The notes under the pieces: generated by a model
Told to the model about the DNA's origin: nothing
Databases searched by the model: none
Seen by the model: the letters and a program-made list of their open reading frames with translations, nothing else
Position numbers and translations under genes: made by a program
Assembly (NCBI RefSeq): GCF_032062105.1
Contig: NW_026925197.1
Coordinates: forward strand, 1-64,000
Direction: 5' to 3'
DNA from: Saccostrea cucullata
Taxonomy: Eukaryota
DNA: 64,000 nucleotides
Part shown: positions 34,881 to 47,526 of the stretch, one piece after another
Position numbering within the stretch: the stretch's first letter is position 1
How the letters are laid out: the number at the start of each line of letters is the position of its first letter

Positions 34881-35505
34881 ATTATCACAGACTCCACACA
34901 AAAACAACAGTGAATTTAATGTTTCCTAATTATTTATTTCTTAAGTTTGGCATTTTAATGGCCACGGCTGGTTCAAATCAATTTATGAAAAATACACGTG
35001 TACAGTGGGTGCCGACCCAATTGGTTTTGGCACACCTCCAATAAAAGCAAGCAAACAAACAATCAATCAATGAATCAACAATCAATCAATCAATCAATAT
35101 TAACTGTACACATGTCAAAGTTTTACAGGATAAGACTGACGTTTAGCTTCAAAGTTCCTGCAGTTGCGTCAGCCTTATGCATCAATCAATATGCATCAAT
35201 CAGTGTTCAATACGATCAATTAATGTTCAAGTCAATCAATGAATGTTCAATTCGATCAATAATATTCAATTAGATCAATCAATGTTCAAACAATATTCAA
35301 CAAATCAATATTCAGTTCATTCAGATCAATGTATTGTATGCTCATGTTAAGCCAATCAATATTCAAATAAATCAATCAATGTTCAATGTAAATTATATAC
35401 AAGTTCCTTGTATTCCATTCCAGAATTATCCACGCAATCATGTTCGAGTTGCGCCCTGTTAACAGCGGCGCAAGTCAAGATGATATGTGTTAAGCTAAAT
35501 TCGCC
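34881..35505 (-). repeat. Ngaro terminal direct repeat B2
   Basis: Matches 41152-41777 with about six small differences; (CAAT)-rich; begins with ATT on the + strand. Confidence 0.9.
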
Positions 35506-36024
35506 TTTCAGCCATTGGCTCTTATCAAGGTTATTACGTAGAATACAATACTGGGTGCAGATAGGGTCAGCCGTGACGATGCTGCTGTGAAGCAGATTGA
35601 TGATTATCATAAACAACAACTACGCCCAGTTTACAGCGGCGAGTGTCATTATGATTGGATAAGTGAAACTCCTCCTCCTGGTCCTTGGCACTATCCATCA
35701 CTCTGGCATGTAACTCTGTCGAAAAGGGGGGAAGTCGGACATGGCTAGGCAACGTCTTAGAATGAGTCGTGGCTCCAAAACTTCAGTATCTTTCCTGAAA
35801 GAAAAAACTCAACACACAGAAAACGAATTCAAGAAATTAGGGATTTGGAAGGGAGGGCTTTTGAAAATATTTCCCCAATTAAGCAGTACTTAAATTAAGA
35901 CGTGTATCTTTGAGGGTGGTTGATAACTGACTGCTCCTATGCTCTGCGCGTATATTGCGCGCGCATTATACCGCGTGGTGCGCTGTGATATATGGATTTA
36001 TATCGTATTCACTGCATAAATCCG

Positions 36025-36089
36025 ATTCTACCAAATCAACAATGCTGAGGAATACCATGAGATGTGACGTAGCCATCACGTGATTCAGT
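36025..36089 (+). repeat. DIRS left inverted terminal repeat
   Basis: ATTCTACCAAATCAAC...CATCACGTGATTCAGT, inverse of 41040-41106. Confidence 0.92.
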
Positions 36090-36303
36090 GCGTAGTAAAC
36101 AGTGATTCGAGCAAGCCGCCATTCTAGTCGCAGAGAAAATTTTTAGCGTTATTTCCTATTTTGATTACGAATTTAGAGGATTTTTGTGTTTTTACTTAAG
36201 TTTTATCCTGGACATCGTGTTTACAATTGGAGAAGTCCTTCAACGTGGTCGCAACGTGACTTTGTTTAGGGTCATAAGCCCTGACCCAAATCCTTTGTGA
36301 ACA

Positions 36304-37752
36304 ATGGCCAATCAGGCCAAGCGACCTTCTCTGAATAATTCAGTAGAGGCTGTCTTCGACAGTGTGGTCGCGGGCATTTCAGCCCAGCAGAACAGTGGTT
36401 TTCAAACCTTAACTGTTGTTCCTGAAGCAATTTCTGAGGAAATTGTAGAATCGTTTGACTCGATTGATTACATAAGATCGGCTGGAGATACTCAGGTTTC
36501 AAGGGGCGGAGCGTCGAAAACCGCCAAAACAATGAGTGACAGACCGAGCACAGAACACATATCCCAGAATTCCCAAACAAAAACAAACAACATGGCCGAC
36601 GAAGACGATCTTTATTGGAAAAAATTATTTTTCCAGAACCAGAAAATGTTGCAGGAATTTATGCAGTCAAAAAGATTGGCGGAGACAGAACCTCCAGTGC
36701 CAAACAAATTACAGAAGGCAAGTTTTACACATGCCTTAGTTTTAAAAATTCAAGCAATGATAAATTTATGATTATGTTTATCATATTGGAACATTCCGAT
36801 AGTCGGTTCCCAGTAGCTTTGCATTAAGCCTAAACGGCTTACATATCAAGTTAATCTATTTAACAAGAAAATTTTTTTGTTTTTTATTATAGACAAATCA
36901 TCAAACAGAAACAGCTGATTCTGATGAGGCTGACGATTTCGATGTTCTTATCAATGAAGCTAAAGAAAAACAGAGTGAAGACGAAGATGACAAGAGTTTT
37001 TTAGGATCCCTAGAAGATTTTATGTTAAATGATGACAGAACTGGACCGAATATTAGTGAAGAACTTTCTAAGGTCCTCAATAAATCATTTCAAAACAGAC
37101 CATCAGAAGAAAAGGCTAAGAAACTGTGTGAAAAATATTTTCGGCCTAAGAACTGTGACAACATGACTGTTCCAAAATGTAATCCAGAAGTCTGGCCATC
37201 ATTGCGCAAAAAATCTCAGTCATGCGATTATAAACTACAGAAAACACAATCTGTTATTCTGAAAGCTATGGTGCCAACTTGCACTCTTCTAGACAAATTG
37301 CTTGTCAGCAAGAAAACAACAAAGACCGTGTCATCAAAAGACACTAACGAAATGCTAGACTTAGCGAGCTGGCATTTACTGATATCTCTCACAAACGAAG
37401 GCACCTAATTCGACCAGAACTTAAGCCGATGTACAAACCCCTGTGTAATGATACAAATCAAGTGACAAGTTTCTTGTTTGGAGATAGCATGGACGAGCAG
37501 ATAAAGAAAATAGATGCTTCAAGAAAAGTGGGCAAAAAGTTGAATGAAAATCAGCATGACACGTCAACATCAAGAAATGCAAATCATGGAAAAGGATCTG
37601 GTGGAAACCACTTCAGAGGTTATTCACAATATGGTGGACCAAAACATACCTATGGCAGATTCAATTACAACTACAAGGAAACAAACAACAACAACAGCAA
37701 CCCTTTTTTAGGGAGGAGCAAGGGCAGGAAACCAGTGCCGAACAAAAAGTAG
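36304..37752 (+). pseudogene. DIRS gag-like ORF1 (exons 36304-36717 and 36893-37752; frameshift near 37365)
   Basis: RPKNC...VPKCNPEVW, D.KLQK.Q, KRR.LIRPEL..MYK.LC, FLFGD motifs; a GC-AG intron joins the frames. Confidence 0.75.
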
Positions 37753-39911
37753 AAAAATCCCTGCCCGCAGCTGAAACAACCAGATTAGATCATTGTGTAA
37801 GTAGTTATAGTAGTGAAAGAAAATTCACAGAAAATGCTTTGTTTGAACTTCCAGTTGATGTGAACAATTTAATAAATGTTCCTGAAAATTTTCAAGGAGG
37901 AAAGATAAGGGAATTTTATGAAAACTGGAAATCTATAACAACTGACAAGTGGATATTAGACACTGTGTTAGGGTATGAAATTGAATTTGATACACTGCCC
38001 CAACAAAATAGACCTAAACCCGAACTAAAATTTAATGACGAAGAAAGTCAACTTGTGAATGAAGAAATTCTGAAATTAGAACAGAAAAATGTCATACAAA
38101 AAGTAGATAGATGTGAGAATGACTTTATTTCTAACATTTTTCTTAGACCAAAAAAGGATGGTTCAAACAGACTCATTTTCAATGTGAAAGAACTAAATGA
38201 AGATGTTCAGTATCACCATTTTAAAATGGACACTTTTAAATCTGCAGTACACATGATGAAGAAAGATTGTTGGTTTGCATCTGTTGATTTAAAAGATGCA
38301 TATTATTCCGTTAATGTAAATAAAAATTTTCGTTAATTCCTACGCTTTGTATGGGAGGGTCAGTGCTATGAATTCACTGCATTGCCCATGGGATTAACAA
38401 GTAGTCCAAGGGTCTTCACCAAGCTTCTGAAACCTGTGTTTTCAGTGTTACACAAACATGGATTTTTAAGTTTGATTTACATAGATGACACTTTTTTGCA
38501 AAGAGAAAGTTTTGAAGAATGTCAAGAAAATGTCCTTAAAACGGTCTCATTATTAGACAATTTGGGGTTTACCATTCACCCGGAGAAGTCAGTATTAATA
38601 CCAAAACAAAGTATATCATTCCTAGGATTTGTGCTGAATTCTCAAAACATGACAATGTCTTTAACACCAGAAAAAGCAAAAGACATTATTCAAGATTGTG
38701 AGAAATTACTTCGTAAGCATGAAATTTCTATCCGCGATTTTTCCAGAGTCATTGGGAAATTTGTGGCTGCTGAACCAGCAATACCATATGCACCATTGCA
38801 TATAAAAATTCTAGAAATAGAAAAGAACAGACGTCTTCAAGAAAATAAGGGAAATTTTGATGGGAAATTCATCTTATCAAATTGTGCTAAAAAAGAACTT
38901 ACCTGGTGGATTGATAATGCAGAAAAGTGTAAGAGTTATCAGCCATTGTCCACTCCCCAAATTATTATTCAAACAGACAGTTCCAAACTAGGTTGGGGTG
39001 GTTTGGTTCCCAATACAAATAAGAAAACAGGAGGACATTGGTCTTATATTGAGCAAAGATCACACATTAATGTGTTAGAACTAAAAGCAGCTTTTCTAAC
39101 CTTACAATCATTTTTTAGTGCATGTACTGATAAACACATTGCTATTCAAATGGATAGTATGGTAGCAGTATCATACATTAATAAAATGGGGGGAAGAAAA
39201 GAAGAACTGAACAATTTGTGTAAAGATATGTGGGAGTGGTGCATTTCTAAAAACATTTGGATAAGTGCTTCACATGTACCTGGTGTGCAAAATGTCCAAG
39301 CCGATAAACTCTCACGAAAACTCAATGATGATTTGGAATGGATGCTCAATAAAGATATATTTCTTGTCATTAAGCAGAAGTACTCTTTAGGGAGAGCAAT
39401 AGACCTGTTTGCTTCAAGAATAAACAAACAATTACCAAAATATGTTTCATATTTACCTGATCCAATGGCAATAGCTGTTGATGCTTTTTCCATTTCTTGG
39501 AGTGATCATTTGATGTATTTGTTTCCTCCTTTCAGTATTCTACAACAAGTACTACAGAAGATAGAGATGGATCTAGCAGAAGTAGTGTTGATAGCACCCC
39601 TGTTTTCAAATCAGTGCTGGTTCCCGAAGTTACTGAAACTGGTGGCAGGTCAGTGTTACATCATTCCAAAGAAGACGGATACATTAATTATGCCGACAGA
39701 TGTTGCGCGTCTCCATCCTCTGAGCAAGATGAGGCTGGGGTGTTTCCGATTATCAGGAAACTCCTCCAGGACAAAAACTTATCAACAGAAGTTATTGACA
39801 CTATTACCTCGTCCTGGCGAAAATCAACAAGAATTCAATATTGGACGTATCTCAAGCAATGGTTGTTATTTTGTGAACGAATCCAAACTGATCCATTTAC
39901 ACCCTCTATAA
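37704..39911 (+). pseudogene. DIRS RT - RNase H - adenine methyltransferase-like ORF with a premature TAA at 38334-38336
   Basis: DLKDAYY, LPMGL..SPRVFTK, YIDD, TDSS..GWG, HINVLEL, AD.LSR, IDLFAS, VDAF..SW, YLFPPF. Confidence 0.9.
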
Positions 39912-40720
39912 ATGTGGTGTTGGAATTTTTACAATCACTAGCAAATAGGAACTTAGGTTACAGTGCTATTAATACAGCTAAATCAGCTTTGTCAAGTTTT
40001 TTGTCTTTAGGTGATGTTAATCTTGGTTCTAATCCATTAGTTCAAAGATTTATGAGAGGAACTTTTGTCAAAAAACCAGTATTTCATAAAAATATACATA
40101 TTTGGGATGTAAATATTGTTTTTCAATATCTGAGAAAGATGGAACCTTTGGAATGTCTTTCCCTTAAAGAATTAACCTTAAAATGTGTGATGTTATTGTC
40201 TTTGTTGACAGGTCAGAGAGGACAAACTCTTCATTTGCTAATGGTAGATGATATATTGTTTGAAAGCAATGTTGTAAAAATTTGTTACAACAGTTTGTTA
40301 AAGACTACTAGACCTTCTTTTCATTTAAATGATGTAGTTATTGAACCTTTTTTAGAAGACAAAACATTATGTTTAGTTAGAATTCTTCAAACTTATATAT
40401 TGAGAACTCAAACCATCAGAGAAGACAACAAACTTTTTGTAAGAACTATGAAACCACACAAGGGTGTAACAAGAGACACAATAAGTAATTGGATCAAATG
40501 TGTTATGATCGCAGCTGAAATAAATACAAAAGTTTTTAAACCACATTCTACCCGAGCAGCAGCGACAAGTGCCGCACAAAAATGTGGAGTGCCTATAACA
40601 GACATTTTGAGAAATGCAGGGTGGACAAATGCACAGACTTTTCAAAAATTTTACAAAAGAAACATTGTTGCCAAAGAGCAGAAGAGTTTTTCGCCAAGTA
40701 TGTTATCAAATGTCAAGTAA
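39614..40720 (+). CDS. DIRS tyrosine recombinase
   Basis: LTGQRGQTL, HSTRAAATS, AGW, TFQKFY catalytic motifs; overlaps the MT region as in DIRS1. Confidence 0.92.
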   Translation: MLVPEVTETGGRSVLHHSKEDGYINYADRCCASPSSEQDEAGVFPIIRKLLQDKNLSTEVIDTITSSWRKSTRIQYWTYLKQWLLFCERIQTDPFTPSINVVLEFLQSLANRNLGYSAINTAKSALSSFLSLGDVNLGSNPLVQRFMRGTFVKKPVFHKNIHIWDVNIVFQYLRKMEPLECLSLKELTLKCVMLLSLLTGQRGQTLHLLMVDDILFESNVVKICYNSLLKTTRPSFHLNDVVIEPFLEDKTLCLVRILQTYILRTQTIREDNKLFVRTMKPHKGVTRDTISNWIKCVMIAAEINTKVFKPHSTRAAATSAAQKCGVPITDILRNAGWTNAQTFQKFYKRNIVAKEQKSFSPSMLSNVK

Positions 40721-40856
40721 TGTGCATTATCTTGACTGTTTGTATATATGTTGTTTCAACAATTGCAATTTTATTAAATGGACTGATTTTCTTTTATGGA
40801 ATGGTTTTTCTTTTTAATTATCCAAAAATTTCTTAAATATGAACACATTCTCTAAA

Positions 40857-40977
40857 ATCTCATGGTATTCCTCAGCATTGCTGATTTGGTAGAATTGAAA
40901 AATTAAACGAATATTACTTGTAAGATGAAGTTTGATTATAATTCTACCAAATCAACTTAATGCTGAGGAATAACATG
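40857..40977 (+). repeat. DIRS internal complementary region (ICR)
   Basis: Complement of the element 5' start fused via AAT (40893-40895) to the complement of the 3' end. Confidence 0.93.
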
Positions 40978-41039
40978 CCCGTCCCTCCCTCCCAGGGGAG
41001 TATGTATGGGCATGTATTCATATTTAATTTGCTTTAAAA

Positions 41040-41154
41040 ACTGAATCACGTGATGGCTACGTCACATCTCATGTTATTCCTCAGCATTAAGTTGATTTGG
41101 TAGAATTATAATCAAACTTCATCTTACAAGTAATATTCGTTTAATTTTTCAATT
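41040..41154 (+). repeat. DIRS right ITR plus 3' extension
   Basis: Inverse of the left ITR to 41106; extension is complementary to the ICR. Confidence 0.92.
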
Positions 41155-41777
41155 ATCACAGACTCCACACAAAAACAACAGTGAATTTAACGTTTCCTAA
41201 TTAATTATTTATTTCTTAAGTTTGGCATTTTAATGGCCACGGCTGGTTCAAATCAATTTATGAAAAATACACGTGTACAATGGGTGCCGACCCAATTGGT
41301 TTTTGGCACACCTCCAATAAAAGCAAGCAAACAAACAATCAATCAATGAATCAACAATCAATCAATCAATATTAACTGTACACATGTCAAAGTTTTACAG
41401 GATAAGACTGACGTTTAGCTTCAAAGTTCCTGCAGTTGCGTCAGCCTTATGCATCAATCAATATGCATCAATCAGTGTTCAATACGATCAATTAATGTTC
41501 AAGTCAATCAATGAATGTTCAATTCGATCAATAATATTCAATTAGATCAATCAATGTTCAAACAATATTCAACAAATCAATATTCAGTTCATTCAGATCA
41601 ATGTATTGTATGCTCATGTTAAGCCAATCAATAATCAAATAAATCAATCAATGTTCAATGTAAATTATATACAAGTTCCTTGTATTCCATTCCAGAATTA
41701 TCCACGCAATCATGTTCGAGTTGCGCCCTGTTAACAGCGGCGCAAGTCAAGATGATATGTGTTAAGCTAAATTCGCC
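41152..41777 (-). repeat. Ngaro internal direct repeat B1
   Basis: Direct copy of 34881-35505. Confidence 0.9.
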
Positions 41778-41876: not shown

Positions 41877-42463
41877 TCATAAGGAATACACGTTATTTTG
41901 GGAGTTTATAATAGTTGAGAGTCCACTTTTAAAATTTTCAAGGAACAGCTTATTACCAGGCGTAGAGAGGTGTACCCCGTCGGGGCGGTAATTGTCGGGA
42001 CTATGATGGATATTTGACTGCTTAATGTACCCTCCATTGTAATGATATAGAATATGTTTTGCAATTGCGCTATTCACTCGCGCCCTACTTTTTTCGATAT
42101 CGGGTCTCCCTTCACGTTTCCAGGCAATCCTTGTTATCATTTGCGACCAAATTATCTTAGTGTGCGGAAATATCATTTGAATTTTTTTCAAATCACGTTT
42201 TATTGCAACTATTAATTCAATGGTCTTCATACGGCCAAGGTCGTTTGCTCCACAATGTAATACCAAGAAATTTGGTGGATCAATGAACGTAAGTAAATGT
42301 TTTAAAAGTTTAAAGACACCATTCCAGCGCATTCCTCGTCGACCTTGCCACAATATTTTATGCCTGTCGAAATTAAGGTCAGATGTGAAACCTAATTCGA
42401 TCGCAGCTAGAAAGGCCCATGAAATTAATGATGACCCGGCGATCCAAATATCTTGATAATTTT
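41877..42463 (-). CDS. SGNH/GDSL hydrolase of the Ngaro element (no own ATG; probably spliced)
   Basis: IWIAGSS (block I), GRRGMRW (II), HCGANDL (III), DGVHL (V); splice acceptor TTTTTTCGTTGCAG ending at 42464. Confidence 0.85.
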
Positions 42464-42502
42464 CTGCAACGAAAAAAGGGATTAGAGTGTCAAGCTGTCA
42501 TT

Positions 42503-43489
42503 CTATTCGACTGCCGGGATCCTAATATATAGGCGATAACAATCTGACTTCCACCTTCCTAACGTTTTAATTGTTTCGTCATCAACGCCCTGAGAATGAA
42601 AGTATGTAGCTGCTCCAATTCTAAAGGAGTGTGATTTATAGTTGCAGCTAGATAAACTGAGACGCGCGAGGCATTTACTTAAGACGGAATTAAATTGATA
42701 TCTAGTTAGCGGTTTACCGCCGAAATGACAAAATAATTGACCAGAGATACTTGGTCTTTGTTGTAAATACTTGCGCATTAGTAATAGCGGACAATAAGGA
42801 CCGCTGATAGCGGGAATAATTAATTGTGTTCCTTTGCCGTACTGGTCAGTCTTTGACCTCCTAAGGTTAACTTCTATGTAGGATGAAGGCTCATTCATAA
42901 CGAGATCGTTATTAAGTAATGCTGCGTTTGAATTTCTCGAGCCTACTGTAAATTCCCCGACTCGAAGAAAGCCAAAAAAGGCCAAGGAAAACGCCGCAGA
43001 AAAGAGACTCGCCTCATAACTCGATGTGCACACAACTGGTAATGTATTAATTAATTTATGGAGGAGCTGAATCGTTATTGATAAACGGGAGTCTTTGGAG
43101 TGTCTCTCTCTCTTCATTCCTTCTACCATTTTCCGAACAATAAAATGTGAAGTATAGTCTGGTAAATCTAAGGTAGAAATCTTAATCTTATGTGATATAG
43201 CTGCTAGATATGTTTTGACAGTGCTCACAGCGTAACCTTTGACGGAAAGGAAAGCAACGAAGTTTGTCAATTCCTCAAGCGATGGAGGCCAAGAGTTACG
43301 GAGATGGAACTCGGACCTGAACTTAGAAAATAAATCGAGGCCGTTGTTGTATGCCGCTTTAGTGTTTTCTGAAGTGGCGATGTCGATTAATCTAACGGTT
43401 TCACTCCTGATATCAGTGAGTGAAATACCAGCGGAATAGGAGTTGACTTTACATCTGCTTTTGGTGCTAGTTCCTGGAATTTGGTCCAC
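42503..43489 (-). CDS. Ngaro tyrosine recombinase
   Basis: AFFGFLRVGEF, SKTDQ, HSFRIGAAT, LGRWKSDCYRLYIR. Confidence 0.95.
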   Translation of the reverse strand: MDQIPGTSTKSRCKVNSYSAGISLTDIRSETVRLIDIATSENTKAAYNNGLDLFSKFRSEFHLRNSWPPSLEELTNFVAFLSVKGYAVSTVKTYLAAISHKIKISTLDLPDYTSHFIVRKMVEGMKRERHSKDSRLSITIQLLHKLINTLPVVCTSSYEASLFSAAFSLAFFGFLRVGEFTVGSRNSNAALLNNDLVMNEPSSYIEVNLRRSKTDQYGKGTQLIIPAISGPYCPLLLMRKYLQQRPSISGQLFCHFGGKPLTRYQFNSVLSKCLARLSLSSCNYKSHSFRIGAATYFHSQGVDDETIKTLGRWKSDCYRLYIRIPAVE

Positions 43490-45882
43490 TGTCGACGAGA
43501 CAAAGCATCAGCAATATTATTACATAAACCAGGGATATGTTCTGCTTTAAATCTAAAATTATATGTCATTGATAGGTATACTAAATAGCGAACAAAGTGC
43601 ATTACTCTTTTAGATTTTGACGTCTGTTTGTTCAAGATGTATACAAGGGCTGCGTTATCTACTCTTAATATAACATTTTTTGATCTGAAGTATTCTCCCC
43701 ACAATGTCATTGCCAGAACTATTGGAACAAGCTCTAAAAAGGTAACATCTCTCAAAATTTCCGTATCCCCCCATGTTGAGGGCCAAGCGAAATGGGCCCA
43801 TTTACCGTTTAAATATGCCCCGCACCCTAGGTTCTTACCCCCAGCACTGTCTGTGTACAATTGAAGAATATCACTACTTAACCAATCAACATCATTTAAA
43901 TAGCATATGCCATTTAAGTGGTTCAAAAAATTGAGCCACATAAGCAAATCGTCTTTGATGGATTTCGTTATGCGGATAAAATGATGCTGCCTTTGTACGC
44001 CAATCATCGCGTCGTAAAACTGGCGATTAAAGGCGCGGGAAGATCGCACTGCTTTGGTGCAAAAGTTTAATTGGCCAACGAGAGATTGCATCTCCTTCGA
44101 AGTGACTTTAGATTTATTTGCCATTTCTGTCAACGAGATCTTAAGTTTGATTAGTTTTTTGTTGGGAATACGGACTTGCCCGAGACATGTGTCAATTTCC
44201 AAACCCAGGTAAGTTAGTTTTGTGACGGGTCCGACAGTTTTATCGATGGCAAGAGGAATTCCCAGTGCTGTACATAACTCCCCAAATTGCCTCATGAGTC
44301 TTGAGCAATCGTCGGATTTCGCTGAACCAGCAAACAGGAAGTCGTCAAGATAGTGCGTAACATGTGAGCAAGCAGATTGCGACCTGACGGTCCATTCCAA
44401 AAATGACGCGAATTTCTCAAATGTAGCGCATGATATAGAACAGCCGAATGGCAAGCATTTGTCAATGTAGTATTTACCCTCAAATTTGAAGCCAAGTAAA
44501 CAAAAATCATCTGGTTGAATTGGTAAAAGTCTAAATGCACTTTTTATGTCCATTTTGCCCAATAAAGCGCCTTTTCCGAGCTGACTTATCATTTCAATAG
44601 CGCTATCGAATGATGAGTAGTGTACAGATGAAAGTTCTTTATCAATGAAGTCGTTCACGCTATTGTTATGTGGATATGACAGATGAGTAATTAAACGCCA
44701 CCCCCCGCTAGATTTTGGCACGACGCCTATTGGAGACACCCTTAGATTCGAAAGTGGTATATTGTAGAAAGGGCCGGCCATGCGACCCATATCAATTTCA
44801 CTTTGCAGTATATTCTGGATTTCGTTCTGATGCTGGTTTGCCGAAATTAAATTTTTACACTCCAAGTGAGTGCGTTGGCCTATATAGTGAAGGGGAAATC
44901 CATATTTAAACCCATTTAATAACTCATTGCCCACATCATGGTTTGAATATGACTGTATCAATATTGAGAGTTGATTAATATCTACTGGAGAATGACCGAG
45001 GTGCTTTAGCCCCCTGGGGGTAGCGAAATCTATAGTTTGGGGTTTGCCCTGGGCGTGGTTGCTGATTTGGTGATTGAAAACGAAAAGGCTGCTTTTGCAT
45101 GGGGAAGCGAGGGGCTGGGCTACGAGGACAAGTGGACATTGCATTGGGTGGTCAGATGCACACCTGATACAACGGTGTGCGTAAATACAATAGGGTTTAC
45201 TACATGCACCCTTGTAGTTAAAATCAAAGCACATGCCTTTTGACGGTTCAACTGTTTTTTGGGGAATGGTAACCGGAGAAGTTACGTATAACATCCAAAG
45301 TTCATTGTCGATTTGCCCCCATTCCATAGAACTATTTCTTGCCTTCTTAAGCCTAAATTGCTCGTCATACAATTTCCAGCCGGTGGGAGATCTATAGGAA
45401 CCCAGTCTAATCGTGTGCATATATTTAAGTAAGCCCAGTGATTGATCGGGGTGAGCTTCGACGTAAACGCTAGTAAATACAAGGAATGCGTCTGTCCATT
45501 TCCCGATATCGGTGATTTGTCTACTTTTCCCTTTTTGCAAAACCAGTTCCCCATCTACTAGGTTTATTTTATTTTTCTTGTCCCTTTCTTCCGTCGTTTC
45601 CAACAGGACGCCCAGATCTAAATACTCCCCATTTTGTATTTTTTCGCGTGTTTTTGAAGAGATCGTGCAACCCAATGCATCAGTTATACTAACAATAAGC
45701 GTAGGTAAGTAGTCAGACTTACCTATTGAGCTAACAGGCTCGTTAATGCCCTCTTCCGTGCTATGGATAGTACTATTGTCATTTTCCCCCTCTTTTTGGT
45801 GCGATTTGGTTGCAGCTTTTTCTTTTCTGGTGGACTTTTTTGCAGGAGTAACCACAGTTGCGGATGACTTGCGCTAAGGCAT
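43387..45882 (-). pseudogene. Ngaro gag + RT-RNase H, fused in this copy by a 5-nt duplication; nonsense codon at codon 3
   Basis: ATG CCT TAG CGC AAG at 45882; YDEQFR gag motif, zinc finger CFDFN..C..C..H.C..C...H; DIKSAFR, LPFG, YLDDF, TDS, LEL, ADALSR. Confidence 0.9.
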
Positions 45883-47267
45883 CTCTCTAAAGAAAGTATT
45901 ATTGATAAATTGTGAATTTGATATTAAATTCGGTTCGCAAGTATCGAAAATCATCCCGAGAATGCCGCCTCCGGTTGGAAGCGGCGAATTCCAAGTTTTC
46001 GTAATGGCACCGGTTCTTACGTTTTCCTGGCATGTAAAATATCCAAATCGTAAAATAGCCTGGAAAACGTCAGATATTTCGGCTACAATCTTCCAGATGC
46101 ATTAACTGTCAGTCCTTAGTACTTTTACTTTTAACACACATTCGATATTGTTATCTAGATGGAAGGGGGTTTTGATGTGTTGCGGTATGAATTGAAATAT
46201 ATGCTTTATTTGCTAGTTCTATAGGAATATACATGTTTGACAGATTGAACTATTGCAGATTGTCACGGTAGCCAAACAATGTAAAAGTCATTGTATCATG
46301 GCTGCGGTGTTTTTCCTTTGAAGTTAAGTGTACAATAACTGGAGATACACCGATGGGCATATCCAGAAAAAAAACTGTGCCGTGTATATGGGCGGAGCCA
46401 GCAAAAACTGTGCCGTGTAAATAAATTATTGAACACCAAGGCGATTTCATCATTTTGAATTACGTGTATATTGAAACTAAATTACAGAATGAATGTGCTT
46501 TGTAATATACAAATGCAAAAATTCTGCAAGCGAAATAAAAGTCTTTCACATAAATTACAGTACGTATATATCCCAAACTACGAAATGATTTTACGGAGCT
46601 CTTCAAATATTCAATCCACAGCAACGCGAAATCAAATTCTTGACATGAATTCCACACAGAAATATATTAAAATATCCCACCTATTGTTATATAGGCTTAA
46701 GCTGTACTGCATCCACAGATGAAGAGTAATTGACTCTGACACAGCGTTTTCGTGAATATGACAGCTCTAGAATATGTCAACGGGTATCCTTTTTCTTTAT
46801 TTTCGAATAACACTTGAATTTATCTTCTTCAACTTCGATTTTTTTCTTTTTTGATATCCAAAGGTTTTCTTGAGAATTCCATTAACAATCCAGGGGCGAA
46901 TCCAGCAATTTTTGAAAGGGGGGAGGCTCCAGGTCGGTGGCCCCAGCACTCATGCACAGAATCACACCGGCCACTTTAAGTCCGTAGCTACATTTTAAAA
47001 AAAGGGGGGGCCTCGAAAAAAAAGTTGACAAGGAAAAAACCCTTTGCAACACACTCTAAAATCCAGGGGGGGGGGGGATGTGCTGGGATGCTGCAATCCG
47101 ACGTCCTTTCTCATGAACACACGCACATAAAATGTTTATTAAAAATACTGACAGAAAGGAGAGATTATCCATGCGGTCACCTGACAAAAACTACATTTTC
47201 TATTGGTGTAATTTAAAATCATGCTGAAAATCTGTGACATGACGTTTGATTAGCCATGATACAAGAA

Positions 47268-47382
47268 AGTTATTGAATATTTATTATGGTGTATCCTGAT
47301 TTATTTGGACGAAGGGCTTCGCACTCGTCACCGCCCTTCGTCCAAATTACTCAGGATACACCATAATAAATATACAATAACT
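47268..47382. repeat. Palindromic hairpin element (~50-bp arms)
   Basis: AGTTATTG...GGACGAAGGGC / GCCCTTCGTCC...CAATAACT. Confidence 0.85.
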
Positions 47383-47526
47383 ATTACTTTAAAAAAAGAA
47401 AAGTGTTTCTTTCAATTGTAATGAAACTACATTGTATATTTCACTTCCTGATATGTTTTTATACTATTCACCTCTACAATGTGATCGGAACTTTTTATTT
47501 TTCGGTGGTTTGCAAATTATAAATAT

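What the first reader, a model, noticed from the sequence alone, without database searches (positions are those of the whole stretch)
34881..41777. DIRS element inserted exactly at the ATT core of a Ngaro element's internal repeat junction: one YR retrotransposon using another's recombination site
Seen: the DIRS starts with ATT (36025) and ends with ATT (41152-41154). Its ICR junction (AAT, 40893-40895) fixes both ends independently. The last three bases of the DIRS are also the first three of the Ngaro B1 repeat (ATTATCACAGACTCC), and the Ngaro's outer terminus at 34881 begins with the same ATT. Established: in Ngaro/PAT elements (A1-ORFs-B1-A2-B2) the B1/A2 joint reproduces the circle junction used by the tyrosine recombinase, and DIRS elements integrate by recombination at a trinucleotide without a TSD. 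Inference: hitting this one ATT among many in AT-rich DNA suggests that the DIRS YR recognises the Ngaro att site, or that the Ngaro YR captured a DIRS circle. This would be a site-specific parasite-of-a-parasite system, or a composite two-recombinase element. I know of no description of this arrangement but cannot search the literature.
Basis: partly seen in the sequence, partly recalled or inferred. Interest (0 to 1): 0.88.

Follow-up and report, generated by a model that had tools for sequence, protein, structure and literature searches.

The report
DIRS retrotransposon nested at Ngaro junction
One tyrosine-recombinase retrotransposon (DIRS type) sits exactly on the three-base recombination point of another (Ngaro type) in an oyster-like genome. 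It is a real and neat nested insertion, but it is a single event and I found no sign of a regular parasite-of-a-parasite system.

Summary
The anatomy is confirmed. [quoted passage not shown] Reverse-complemented, that region matches the predicted circle junction at 120 of 121 bases. The element interrupts a minus-strand Ngaro element with RT/RNase H, tyrosine recombinase (YR) and SGNH hydrolase frames.

The break lies exactly at CCG-ATT-ATCACAG, the Ngaro internal B1|A2 joint. At least eight other loci of this Ngaro family carry that joint uninterrupted. The family's outer ends ([A/T]TT|ATCACAG and AAATCCG|ATT plus unique flank) show that this ATT is also the Ngaro's own crossover point.

The proposed system is not supported:
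- Seven other independent copies of this DIRS family sit at unrelated ATT sites.
- No other Ngaro joint is occupied.
- No second copy of the composite exists.
- The two junctions share nothing beyond ATT (13 of 50 flanking bases).
- The two YRs are about 20% identical.

ATT is the commonest DIRS1-like terminal trinucleotide. A chance hit is still unlikely: 1 in 419 ATT/AAT sites within the Ngaro, and about 0.01-0.05 such events expected genome-wide. A bias toward the junction, which forms a hairpin with part of the ATT in a bubble, stays open.

Reads did not independently bridge the two joints. Another first-stage note on this same stretch reported the hairpin.

The parts
34881..35506 (-). Ngaro B2 repeat (3' outer terminus of the minus-strand element; on the + strand it starts ATTATCACAG)
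   Evidence: 98.1% identical to 41152-41777. Flanks to its left differ in every copy.
35507..35859 (-). Spacer X between A2 and B2, unique within the element
   Evidence: Present in all B-A-X-B copies and absent from the A1 ends. It has no match elsewhere in the window.
35860..36024 (-). Ngaro A2 repeat (about 165 nt; on the + strand it ends CATAAATCCG)
   Evidence: The same 165 nt forms the 5' A1 end of full copies L087-L091 and of mini copies, followed by ATT plus unique flank.
35983..36024 (.). Left arm, loop and first 9 nt of the right arm of the junction hairpin; the rest of the right arm is 41152-41161
   Evidence: Restored junction folds at -11.6 kcal/mol, z -3.1 against mononucleotide shuffles. 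The intact copy L002 gives z -2.1 against dinucleotide shuffles. The first two bases (AT) of the ATT lie in a 2x2 internal loop.
36025..41154 (+). DIRS1-like retrotransposon, defective copy; ATT at both ends, one of which belongs to the target
   Evidence: ITRs and ICR. RT, RNase H and YR domains.
36025..36089 (+). DIRS left inverted terminal repeat
   Evidence: 36041-36089 is 98% complementary (49 nt) to 41040-41088.
36304..37752 (+). DIRS ORF1 region (gag-like, no Pfam match), in three open pieces
   Evidence: ORFs; no family. Contigs of other copies carry 22 nt more at 37365/37366 and skip 175 nt at 36715/36891.
37839..39911 (+). DIRS RT / RNase H frame plus about 195 further residues, broken by an in-frame stop at 38334-38336
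   Evidence: RVT_1 hits in both pieces, RNase_H and RVT_3 in the second. Stop seen.
39614..40720 (+). DIRS tyrosine recombinase ORF, overlapping the RT frame
   Evidence: Phage_integrase 4.8e-10 and Phage_int_SAM_4.
40857..40977 (+). DIRS internal complementary region; the joint is AAT at 40893-40895
   Evidence: 120 of 121 match to the predicted circle junction.
41040..41154 (+). DIRS right inverted terminal repeat (41040-41106) plus a 47-nt outer extension
41152..41777 (-). Ngaro B1 repeat; its first three + strand bases are the shared ATT
41877..42494 (-). Ngaro SGNH/GDSL hydrolase open frame
   Evidence: Lipase_GDSL_2 1.6e-6. Blocks GSS, GRRG, GAND and DGVH all lie in one open frame.
42503..43489 (-). 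Ngaro tyrosine recombinase ORF, open
   Evidence: Phage_integrase and Phage_int_SAM_1. Open frame of 334 aa without stops.
43387..45855 (-). Ngaro RT / RNase H ORF (822 aa), with no room for a methyltransferase domain
   Evidence: RVT_1 at 379-554 and RNase H-like at 703-788.
45856..45900 (-). Last stretch shared with other Ngaro copies; the A1 repeat that should follow is missing
   Evidence: Family matches end at about 45900-45911, where another repeat family begins. Full copies continue into A1. No second A copy exists in the window.

Best explanation
This is a single nested integration, not a dedicated system. A DIRS1-like double-stranded circle has a junction reading ...TTTTTCA-ATT-CTACC..., templated by its ICR. 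It recombined through a three-base ATT overlap with the ATT in the internal B1|A2 joint of a Ngaro copy. The Ngaro was either already resident at this locus or, less likely, still extrachromosomal. The asymmetric core fixes the relative orientation, DIRS on + and Ngaro on -. The result has ATT on both sides and no other duplication.

Shown here: the ends of both elements, the empty site in sister copies, and the fact that the Ngaro family itself crosses over in this same ATT. Inferred: that the DIRS machinery did the exchange, since DIRS copies elsewhere use ATT sites with no further motif.

Why this ATT was used is unresolved. My odds inside this explanation are about even between plain coincidence and a soft bias. 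A soft bias could come from the junction forming a 19-nt imperfect hairpin or cruciform with two bases of the ATT in a bubble, or from Ngaro recombinase occupying the site. Both elements are now disabled. The DIRS has a 22-nt gap in ORF1 relative to other copies and an in-frame stop in RT. The Ngaro has lost its 5' A1 repeat. The pair did not spread as a unit.
For: - DIRS ends are defined independently by the ICR.
- The empty joint CCG-ATT-ATCACAG is present at 8 or more other loci (coordinates).
- Ngaro outer ends show ATT or TTT on the left (18 of 18 A or T at the first base; 0.655^18 = 5e-4 by composition) and ATT on the right (8 of 8).
- Seven other independent DIRS sites are unrelated to Ngaro and share only ATT.
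- No other DIRS/Ngaro joint exists in the genome. Contigs listed for the two recombinase searches coincide within 15 kb only in this window.
- The junction flanks are 13 of 50 identical against 29% expected.
- The two recombinases are 20% identical, E 0.27.
- ATT is the most frequent DIRS1-like terminal trinucleotide (PMC3266345). The trinucleotide integration model is described in PMC7192593.
Against: A uniform-ATT model makes the hit improbable. It is one of 419 ATT/AAT sites in the 5,893-nt Ngaro. My own arithmetic on lower-bound candidate counts gives roughly 700 DIRS-type x 1,000-2,000 Ngaro joints / 8.5e7 sites, or about 0.01-0.02 expected events in the genome. One of eight DIRS copies and one of about fourteen joints is far above that.
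Confidence: 0.6

Rival explanations
1. True cross-recognition. The DIRS recombinase, or its integration complex, treats the Ngaro junction as a preferred attachment site, so DIRS elements recurrently parasitise Ngaro joints.
For: The exact coincidence of the two crossover trinucleotides. The low chance expectation. The junction lies in a hairpin with part of the ATT unpaired. The DIRS circle junction also places its ATT in the 3' arm of a long stem. DIRS-1 of Dictyostelium preferentially inserts into copies of itself (Cappello 1984, as cited in PMC5633606). Some Ngaro types preferentially target other mobile elements (PMC8547959).
Against: There is only one event. Seven other DIRS copies lie at unrelated sites. 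13 or more sister joints are empty. No flank similarity exists beyond ATT. The recombinases are only 20% identical. None of about 15 related DIRS right flanks holds Ngaro genes.
Confidence: 0.22
2. Capture by the Ngaro recombinase. The intact chromosomal B1|A2 joint acted as a live attachment site. The Ngaro enzyme, supplied in cis or by sister copies, recombined it with a DIRS circle.
For: The Ngaro recombinase frame of this copy is open. The family is young and active, with 94-99% identical copies and mobilised mini derivatives. Ngaro integration pairs its specific joint with loosely defined [A/T]TT targets, so any ATT-bearing circle is a possible partner.
Against: The partner site in the DIRS is exactly the DIRS's own junction, one of 347 ATT/AAT sites in the 5,127-nt monomer. 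This model does not explain that without DIRS proteins also taking part. No other foreign DNA sits in any sister joint.
Confidence: 0.1
3. Assembly artefact: two repeats were joined wrongly in the contig.
For: Neither joint was seen bridged in the listed Logan contigs of four runs. Both elements are multi-copy.
Against: Both joints fall to the base on termini defined independently by the ICR and by sister Ngaro copies. Each side carries a single ATT and no bases are lost or gained. A misjoin would not reproduce a clean recombinase product at both ends 5.1 kb apart.
Confidence: 0.03

Closest known systems
DIRS1-like retrotransposons (DIRS order; model of Cappello 1985 and Goodwin & Poulter, summarised in PMC7192593 and PMC3266345)
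   Same: Inverted terminal repeats. ICR complementary to both outer ends with a 3-nt joint. RT/RNase H frame overlapping a tyrosine recombinase frame. ATT at both ends and no target duplication. Low target specificity beyond the trinucleotide.
   Different: Nothing essential differs. This copy is broken in ORF1 and RT. The segment after RNase H had no Pfam match, so the methyltransferase domain was not confirmed.
Ngaro retrotransposons with an SGNH hydrolase ORF (Goodwin & Poulter 2004, as cited in PMC9210276 and PMC7192593)
   Same: A1-[RT/RH, YR, hydrolase]-B1-A2-B2 split direct repeats in full family copies. No methyltransferase domain. The internal B1|A2 joint equals the joint of the outer ends. 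Trinucleotide ends without a target duplication.
   Different: A 353-nt spacer lies between A2 and B2. Another note of this scan saw the same layout in this genome. The window copy lacks A1. Many copies end after a single B, which I read as B1 x B2 recombination.
Self-targeting of DIRS-1 in Dictyostelium (Cappello et al. 1984, cited in PMC5633606) and Ngaro insertions into endogenous virophages of Cafeteria (PMC8547959)
   Same: Tyrosine-recombinase retroelements that land preferentially in other mobile DNA.
   Different: Those preferences are shown by many events and are not tied to the host element's own recombination point. Here there is one event, and it lies exactly on that point in an element of another superfamily.

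Membership tests
DIRS1-like retrotransposon | Inverted terminal repeats | tested here: met
   36041-36089 against 41040-41088, 49 nt, 98% complementary.
DIRS1-like retrotransposon | Internal complementary region matching both outer ends, joined at a trinucleotide | tested here: met
   Arms of 39 nt (97%) and 85 nt (100%) overlap in AAT at 40893-40895. 120 of 121 bases match the predicted circle junction.
DIRS1-like retrotransposon | RT, RNase H and tyrosine recombinase | tested here: met
   RVT_1, RNase_H/RVT_3 and Phage_integrase.
DIRS1-like retrotransposon | Methyltransferase-like domain after RNase H | tested here: inconclusive
   About 195 residues follow RNase H in the 509-aa frame, but Pfam gave no match there. 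No fold search was run.
DIRS1-like retrotransposon | No target-site duplication beyond the shared trinucleotide | tested here: met
   Removing 36025-41151 restores the joint seen in sister Ngaro copies base for base.
Ngaro retrotransposon | Split direct repeats A1-[ORFs]-B1-A2-B2 | tested here: met
   Met for the family: A1 in L087-L091 and B1-A2-X-B2 in L002-L008. The window copy has B1, A2 and B2 but no A1.
Ngaro retrotransposon | RT/RNase H followed by a tyrosine recombinase, with no methyltransferase domain | tested here: met
   Domain order and ORF lengths.
Ngaro retrotransposon | Internal B1|A2 joint identical to the joint of the outer ends | tested here: met
   The internal joint is CCG-ATT-ATCACAG. 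The outer ends are CCG|ATT+flank (8 of 8) and flank+[A/T]TT|ATCACAG (18 of 18).
Ngaro retrotransposon | Placement of RT and YR inside the Ngaro clade by phylogeny | not tested
   No reference sequences were fetched. Assignment rests on structure and domain content.
   1 of at least 14 joints of this family is occupied, 0 of 7 other DIRS sites lies in a Ngaro, and 0 of about 15 related DIRS right flanks carries Ngaro genes. The test is limited to one family of each.
   13 of 50 flanking bases are identical, against 29% expected.
Composite two-recombinase element | The DIRS+Ngaro unit is found at other loci with the same internal joints | tested here: not met
   Both chimeric joints are unique to this window.

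The most novel reading that the evidence does not exclude
The circle-junction copy kept inside a Ngaro element is a hairpin-forming site with part of its ATT core in a bubble. It may be a favoured heterologous substrate for a DIRS-type tyrosine recombinase, or for a mixed synapse of both enzymes. If so, retroelements of different DIRS-order superfamilies could use each other's attachment sites through structure and a shared three-base core rather than through sequence.
Probability: 0.3. Interest if true: 0.7.

Novelty: new member of a known kind. Interest (0 to 1): 0.42.

Why it matters
The target rules of eukaryotic tyrosine-recombinase retroelements are almost untested. PMC7192593 states that the specificity of the DIRS recombinase has not been examined experimentally. 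This locus gives a concrete pair of junction sequences, with sister empty sites, and two recombinase genes for a cross-recombination assay. If the junction was favoured, resident elements would carry live landing pads for unrelated elements, which would shape how such elements cluster. If it was chance, the locus is simply a clean textbook example of trinucleotide-guided integration in both superfamilies.

Tried and rejected
- A survey of other Ngaro families failed.
- Matching the contigs listed for the two recombinase searches by eye found only this window. Only 122 of 2,026 and 111 of 683 candidates were scored, so this is weak.
- An exact-protein look-up of the Ngaro recombinase in other assemblies found nothing on record.
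- Laying contigs of four runs did not bridge the joints.
- I first read the 626-nt repeats as LTR-like with solo copies. I dropped that reading once every copy was seen to continue identically to the right of the repeat into the hydrolase and recombinase genes.
- A tandem R-U array and a 626-nt duplication made by the DIRS event were rejected for the same reason.
- A 1,241-nt stretch near the joint in C6891 and a 973-nt insertion in C19902 are not at the ATT. The latter shows a 6-nt duplication typical of another transposon class.
- Hairpin preference of DIRS targets: only three sites have both flanks. One (C6411) has a small hairpin with ATT opening its 3' arm and one (C15022) has none. Nothing can be concluded from this.
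- Cappello 1984 (PMC369040) is not held.
- The spliced DIRS model was not joined or searched as one sequence.
Full report
**What is there.**

Between 36025 and 41154 on the + strand lies a DIRS1-like retrotransposon.
- Its left end (36025-36089) and right end (41040-41106, plus a 47-nt extension to 41154) are inverted repeats.
- An internal complementary region at 40857-40977 pairs with both outer ends: 39 nt at 97% and 85 nt at 100%. The two halves overlap in AAT at 40893-40895.
- Reverse-complemented, this region equals 'right end + ATT + left end' with one mismatch in 121 nt. The element's ends are therefore fixed independently of its flanks.
- Pfam finds RT in two pieces (37839-38336 and 38382-39911), RNase H, and a tyrosine recombinase (39614-40720) that overlaps the RT frame.
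- The copy is defective. It has an in-frame stop at 38334-38336. Its ORF1 is in pieces, and contigs of other copies carry 22 nt more at 37365/37366.

**The host element.**

I first took the 626-nt direct repeats (34881-35506 and 41152-41777, 98.1% identical) for LTR-like repeats with solo copies. That was wrong. In every copy the sequence to the right of the repeat continues identically. In the window it encodes, on the minus strand:
- an SGNH/GDSL hydrolase (41877-42494, all four catalytic blocks in one open frame);
- a tyrosine recombinase (42503-43489, open);
- an 822-aa RT/RNase H frame (43387-45855) with no room for a methyltransferase domain.

Five full copies fetched from the genome end, on the window's + strand, with a 165-nt stretch identical to 35860-36024, followed by ATT and unique flank. 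Read on its own (minus) strand, the family is A1(165)-[RT/RH, YR, hydrolase]-B1(626)-A2(165)-X(353)-B2(626). This is a Ngaro with a spacer between A2 and B2. The window copy has B1, A2, X and B2 but lacks A1. Its similarity to the family stops at about 45900, where another repeat family begins.

**The junction.**

Seven other loci read CATAAATCCG-ATT-ATCACAG without interruption: C2525, C6346, C10613, C11228, C8370, C12648 and C19902. An eighth, C11135/C5627, reads ...ATATTCG-ATT-ATCACAG. Five more loci are contiguous by coordinates.

The family's outer ends read flank+[A/T]TT|ATCACAG, with 8 ATT, 10 TTT and never G or C at the first base. That has probability 5e-4 by base composition. The other outer end reads AAATCCG|ATT+flank in 8 of 8 cases. 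The internal B1|A2 joint therefore reproduces the joint of the outer ends, and this ATT is the Ngaro's own crossover point.

The DIRS sits exactly there: ...AAATCCG|ATT-CTACC...TTTCA-ATT|ATCACAG... Removing 36025-41151 restores the sister-copy sequence base for base.

**Is it a system?**

I tabulated all close copies of this DIRS family that the genome search returned.
- Seven further independent sites (C15022, C6411/C2109, C20016, C12874, C2717, C9824, C9490) all begin with ATT. They lie in unrelated sequence with no common motif on either side.
- A further group of six contigs shares one left flank and is a separate matter (see 'In passing' below).
- None of about 15 right flanks of related DIRS families (66-77% identical termini) carries Ngaro coding sequence within 1.5 kb.
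- Only 1 of at least 14 internal joints of this Ngaro family is occupied. No second copy of either chimeric joint exists.
- Around the ATT the two junctions share 13 of 50 bases, against 29% expected.
- The two recombinases are about 20% identical, E 0.27.
- ATT is the commonest terminal trinucleotide of DIRS1-like elements in general (PMC3266345), so a shared core is not remarkable.

These results do not support a regular site-specific parasite-of-a-parasite or a composite element that moves as a unit.

**Is it chance?**

Not comfortably.
- The Ngaro without the DIRS holds 419 ATT/AAT sites in 5,893 nt. ATT/AAT occurs at 0.073 per base in the window.
- The genome searches show at least 683 DIRS-type and at least 2,026 Ngaro-type recombinase candidates. 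A uniform-ATT model then predicts about 0.01-0.02 junction hits in the whole 1.17-Gb genome, perhaps 0.05 if elements cluster. This is my own arithmetic on lower-bound counts.
- The finding was selected because it looked special, which weakens the argument by an unknown factor.
- One structural feature could bias the choice. The restored junction forms an imperfect 19-nt hairpin (35983-36001 / 36016-36024 + 41152-41161). The first two bases of the ATT lie in a 2x2 internal loop. The fold gives z -3.1 for the restored window junction with mononucleotide shuffles, and z -2.1 for an intact sister copy with dinucleotide shuffles.
- The full stem exists only where A is joined to B. The DIRS circle junction also places its ATT in the 3' arm of a long stem.
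- With only three DIRS targets known on both sides, a hairpin preference cannot be tested.

**Mechanism.**

Steps shown:
- both elements' termini;
- the empty site in sister copies;
- the shared crossover trinucleotide;
- the orientation rule (the asymmetric ATT core puts the DIRS on + and the Ngaro on -).

Steps inferred:
- a DIRS circle recombined through the 3-nt overlap with the chromosomal, or possibly still extrachromosomal, Ngaro joint;
- the DIRS enzyme carried this out.

The alternative that the Ngaro enzyme used its own live joint to capture a circle is possible, since this copy's recombinase frame is open. It leaves unexplained why the partner was precisely the DIRS junction, one of 347 ATT/AAT sites in the DIRS monomer.

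**Literature.**
- The trinucleotide integration model and the statement that the DIRS recombinase's specificity is untested are in PMC7192593.
- DIRS-1 inserting preferentially into its own copies (Cappello 1984) is cited in PMC5633606. The paper itself is not held.
- Ngaro types that prefer endogenous virophages are described in PMC8547959.
- Ngaro elements with an SGNH hydrolase ORF are described in PMC9210276.
- Two full-text searches turned up no description of a DIRS on a Ngaro joint. That is not proof of absence.

**Limits.**
- Genome DNA could no longer be fetched, apart from five short stretches, so other Ngaro and DIRS families were not surveyed.
- Contigs of four public runs did not visibly bridge the two joints.
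I did not check this.

**In passing.**
- Contigs of three runs guessed to be RNA show a 175-nt intron in DIRS ORF1. They also show a 1,739-nt GT..AG splice that skips RT/RNase H and lands just upstream of the recombinase frame.
- Mini Ngaro derivatives (A1-39 bp-B1-A2-X-B2) have multiplied.
- Six contigs share one 60-nt flank to the left of a DIRS left repeat.

**Verdict.**

This is a real, exact, single nested insertion of one tyrosine-recombinase retroelement on the recombination point of another. The proposed system is not supported by the copies that could be examined. A soft preference for the junction remains a live possibility that can be tested.

Noticed in passing
window 36715-36891 and 37796-39536: Contigs of three runs guessed to be RNA (X5, X2, X13) skip 175 nt in DIRS ORF1, which reads GC..AG after a 2-nt shift. 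They also skip 1,739 nt (GT..AG), removing RT/RNase H and landing just upstream of the recombinase frame. This could be a subgenomic message for the recombinase.
   Followed up: partly
window 37365-37366 and 38334-38336: The window's DIRS copy lacks 22 nt that contigs of X1, X5 and X2 carry. It also has an in-frame stop in RT where all four runs read another letter. The nested copy is a dead member of a family that seems to be expressed.
   Followed up: partly
L007 (C8370), C9378, C21077 (coordinates): Mini Ngaro derivatives with the layout A1(165)-39 bp-B1-A2-X-B2 occur at three or more loci, so they were mobilised in trans. Many other copies end after a single B repeat, which I read as B1 x B2 recombination.
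   Followed up: partly
window 45896-46089 and 46290-47390: The Ngaro breaks off at about 45900 directly after ...GTATT, where another repeat family begins. That family shows 88-90% matches plus inverted matches on many contigs. A 1.1-kb high-copy repeat with inverted ends follows at 46290-47390. The A1 repeat is nowhere in the window.
   Followed up: partly
L037, L038, L040, L042, L043, L044 (C19476, C3294, C8649, C11687, C9631, C17625): Six contigs share the same 60 nt (...AAAGGTCGACAGTTGA) immediately left of a 64-nt DIRS left repeat, and only the repeat matches the window's DIRS. This is either a related subfamily with a longer end or a repeat that carries a captured DIRS terminus.
   Followed up: no
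L014/L015 (C19902): A 973-nt insertion lies 19 nt into the spacer X of a sister Ngaro, with a 6-nt repeat of the target on both sides. It is a transposon of another class and is not at the ATT.
   Followed up: partly
window 35507-35859: The 353-nt spacer between A2 and B2 departs from the textbook A2-B2 abutment. It is conserved across the family and has no similarity to the region next to A1.
   Followed up: partly
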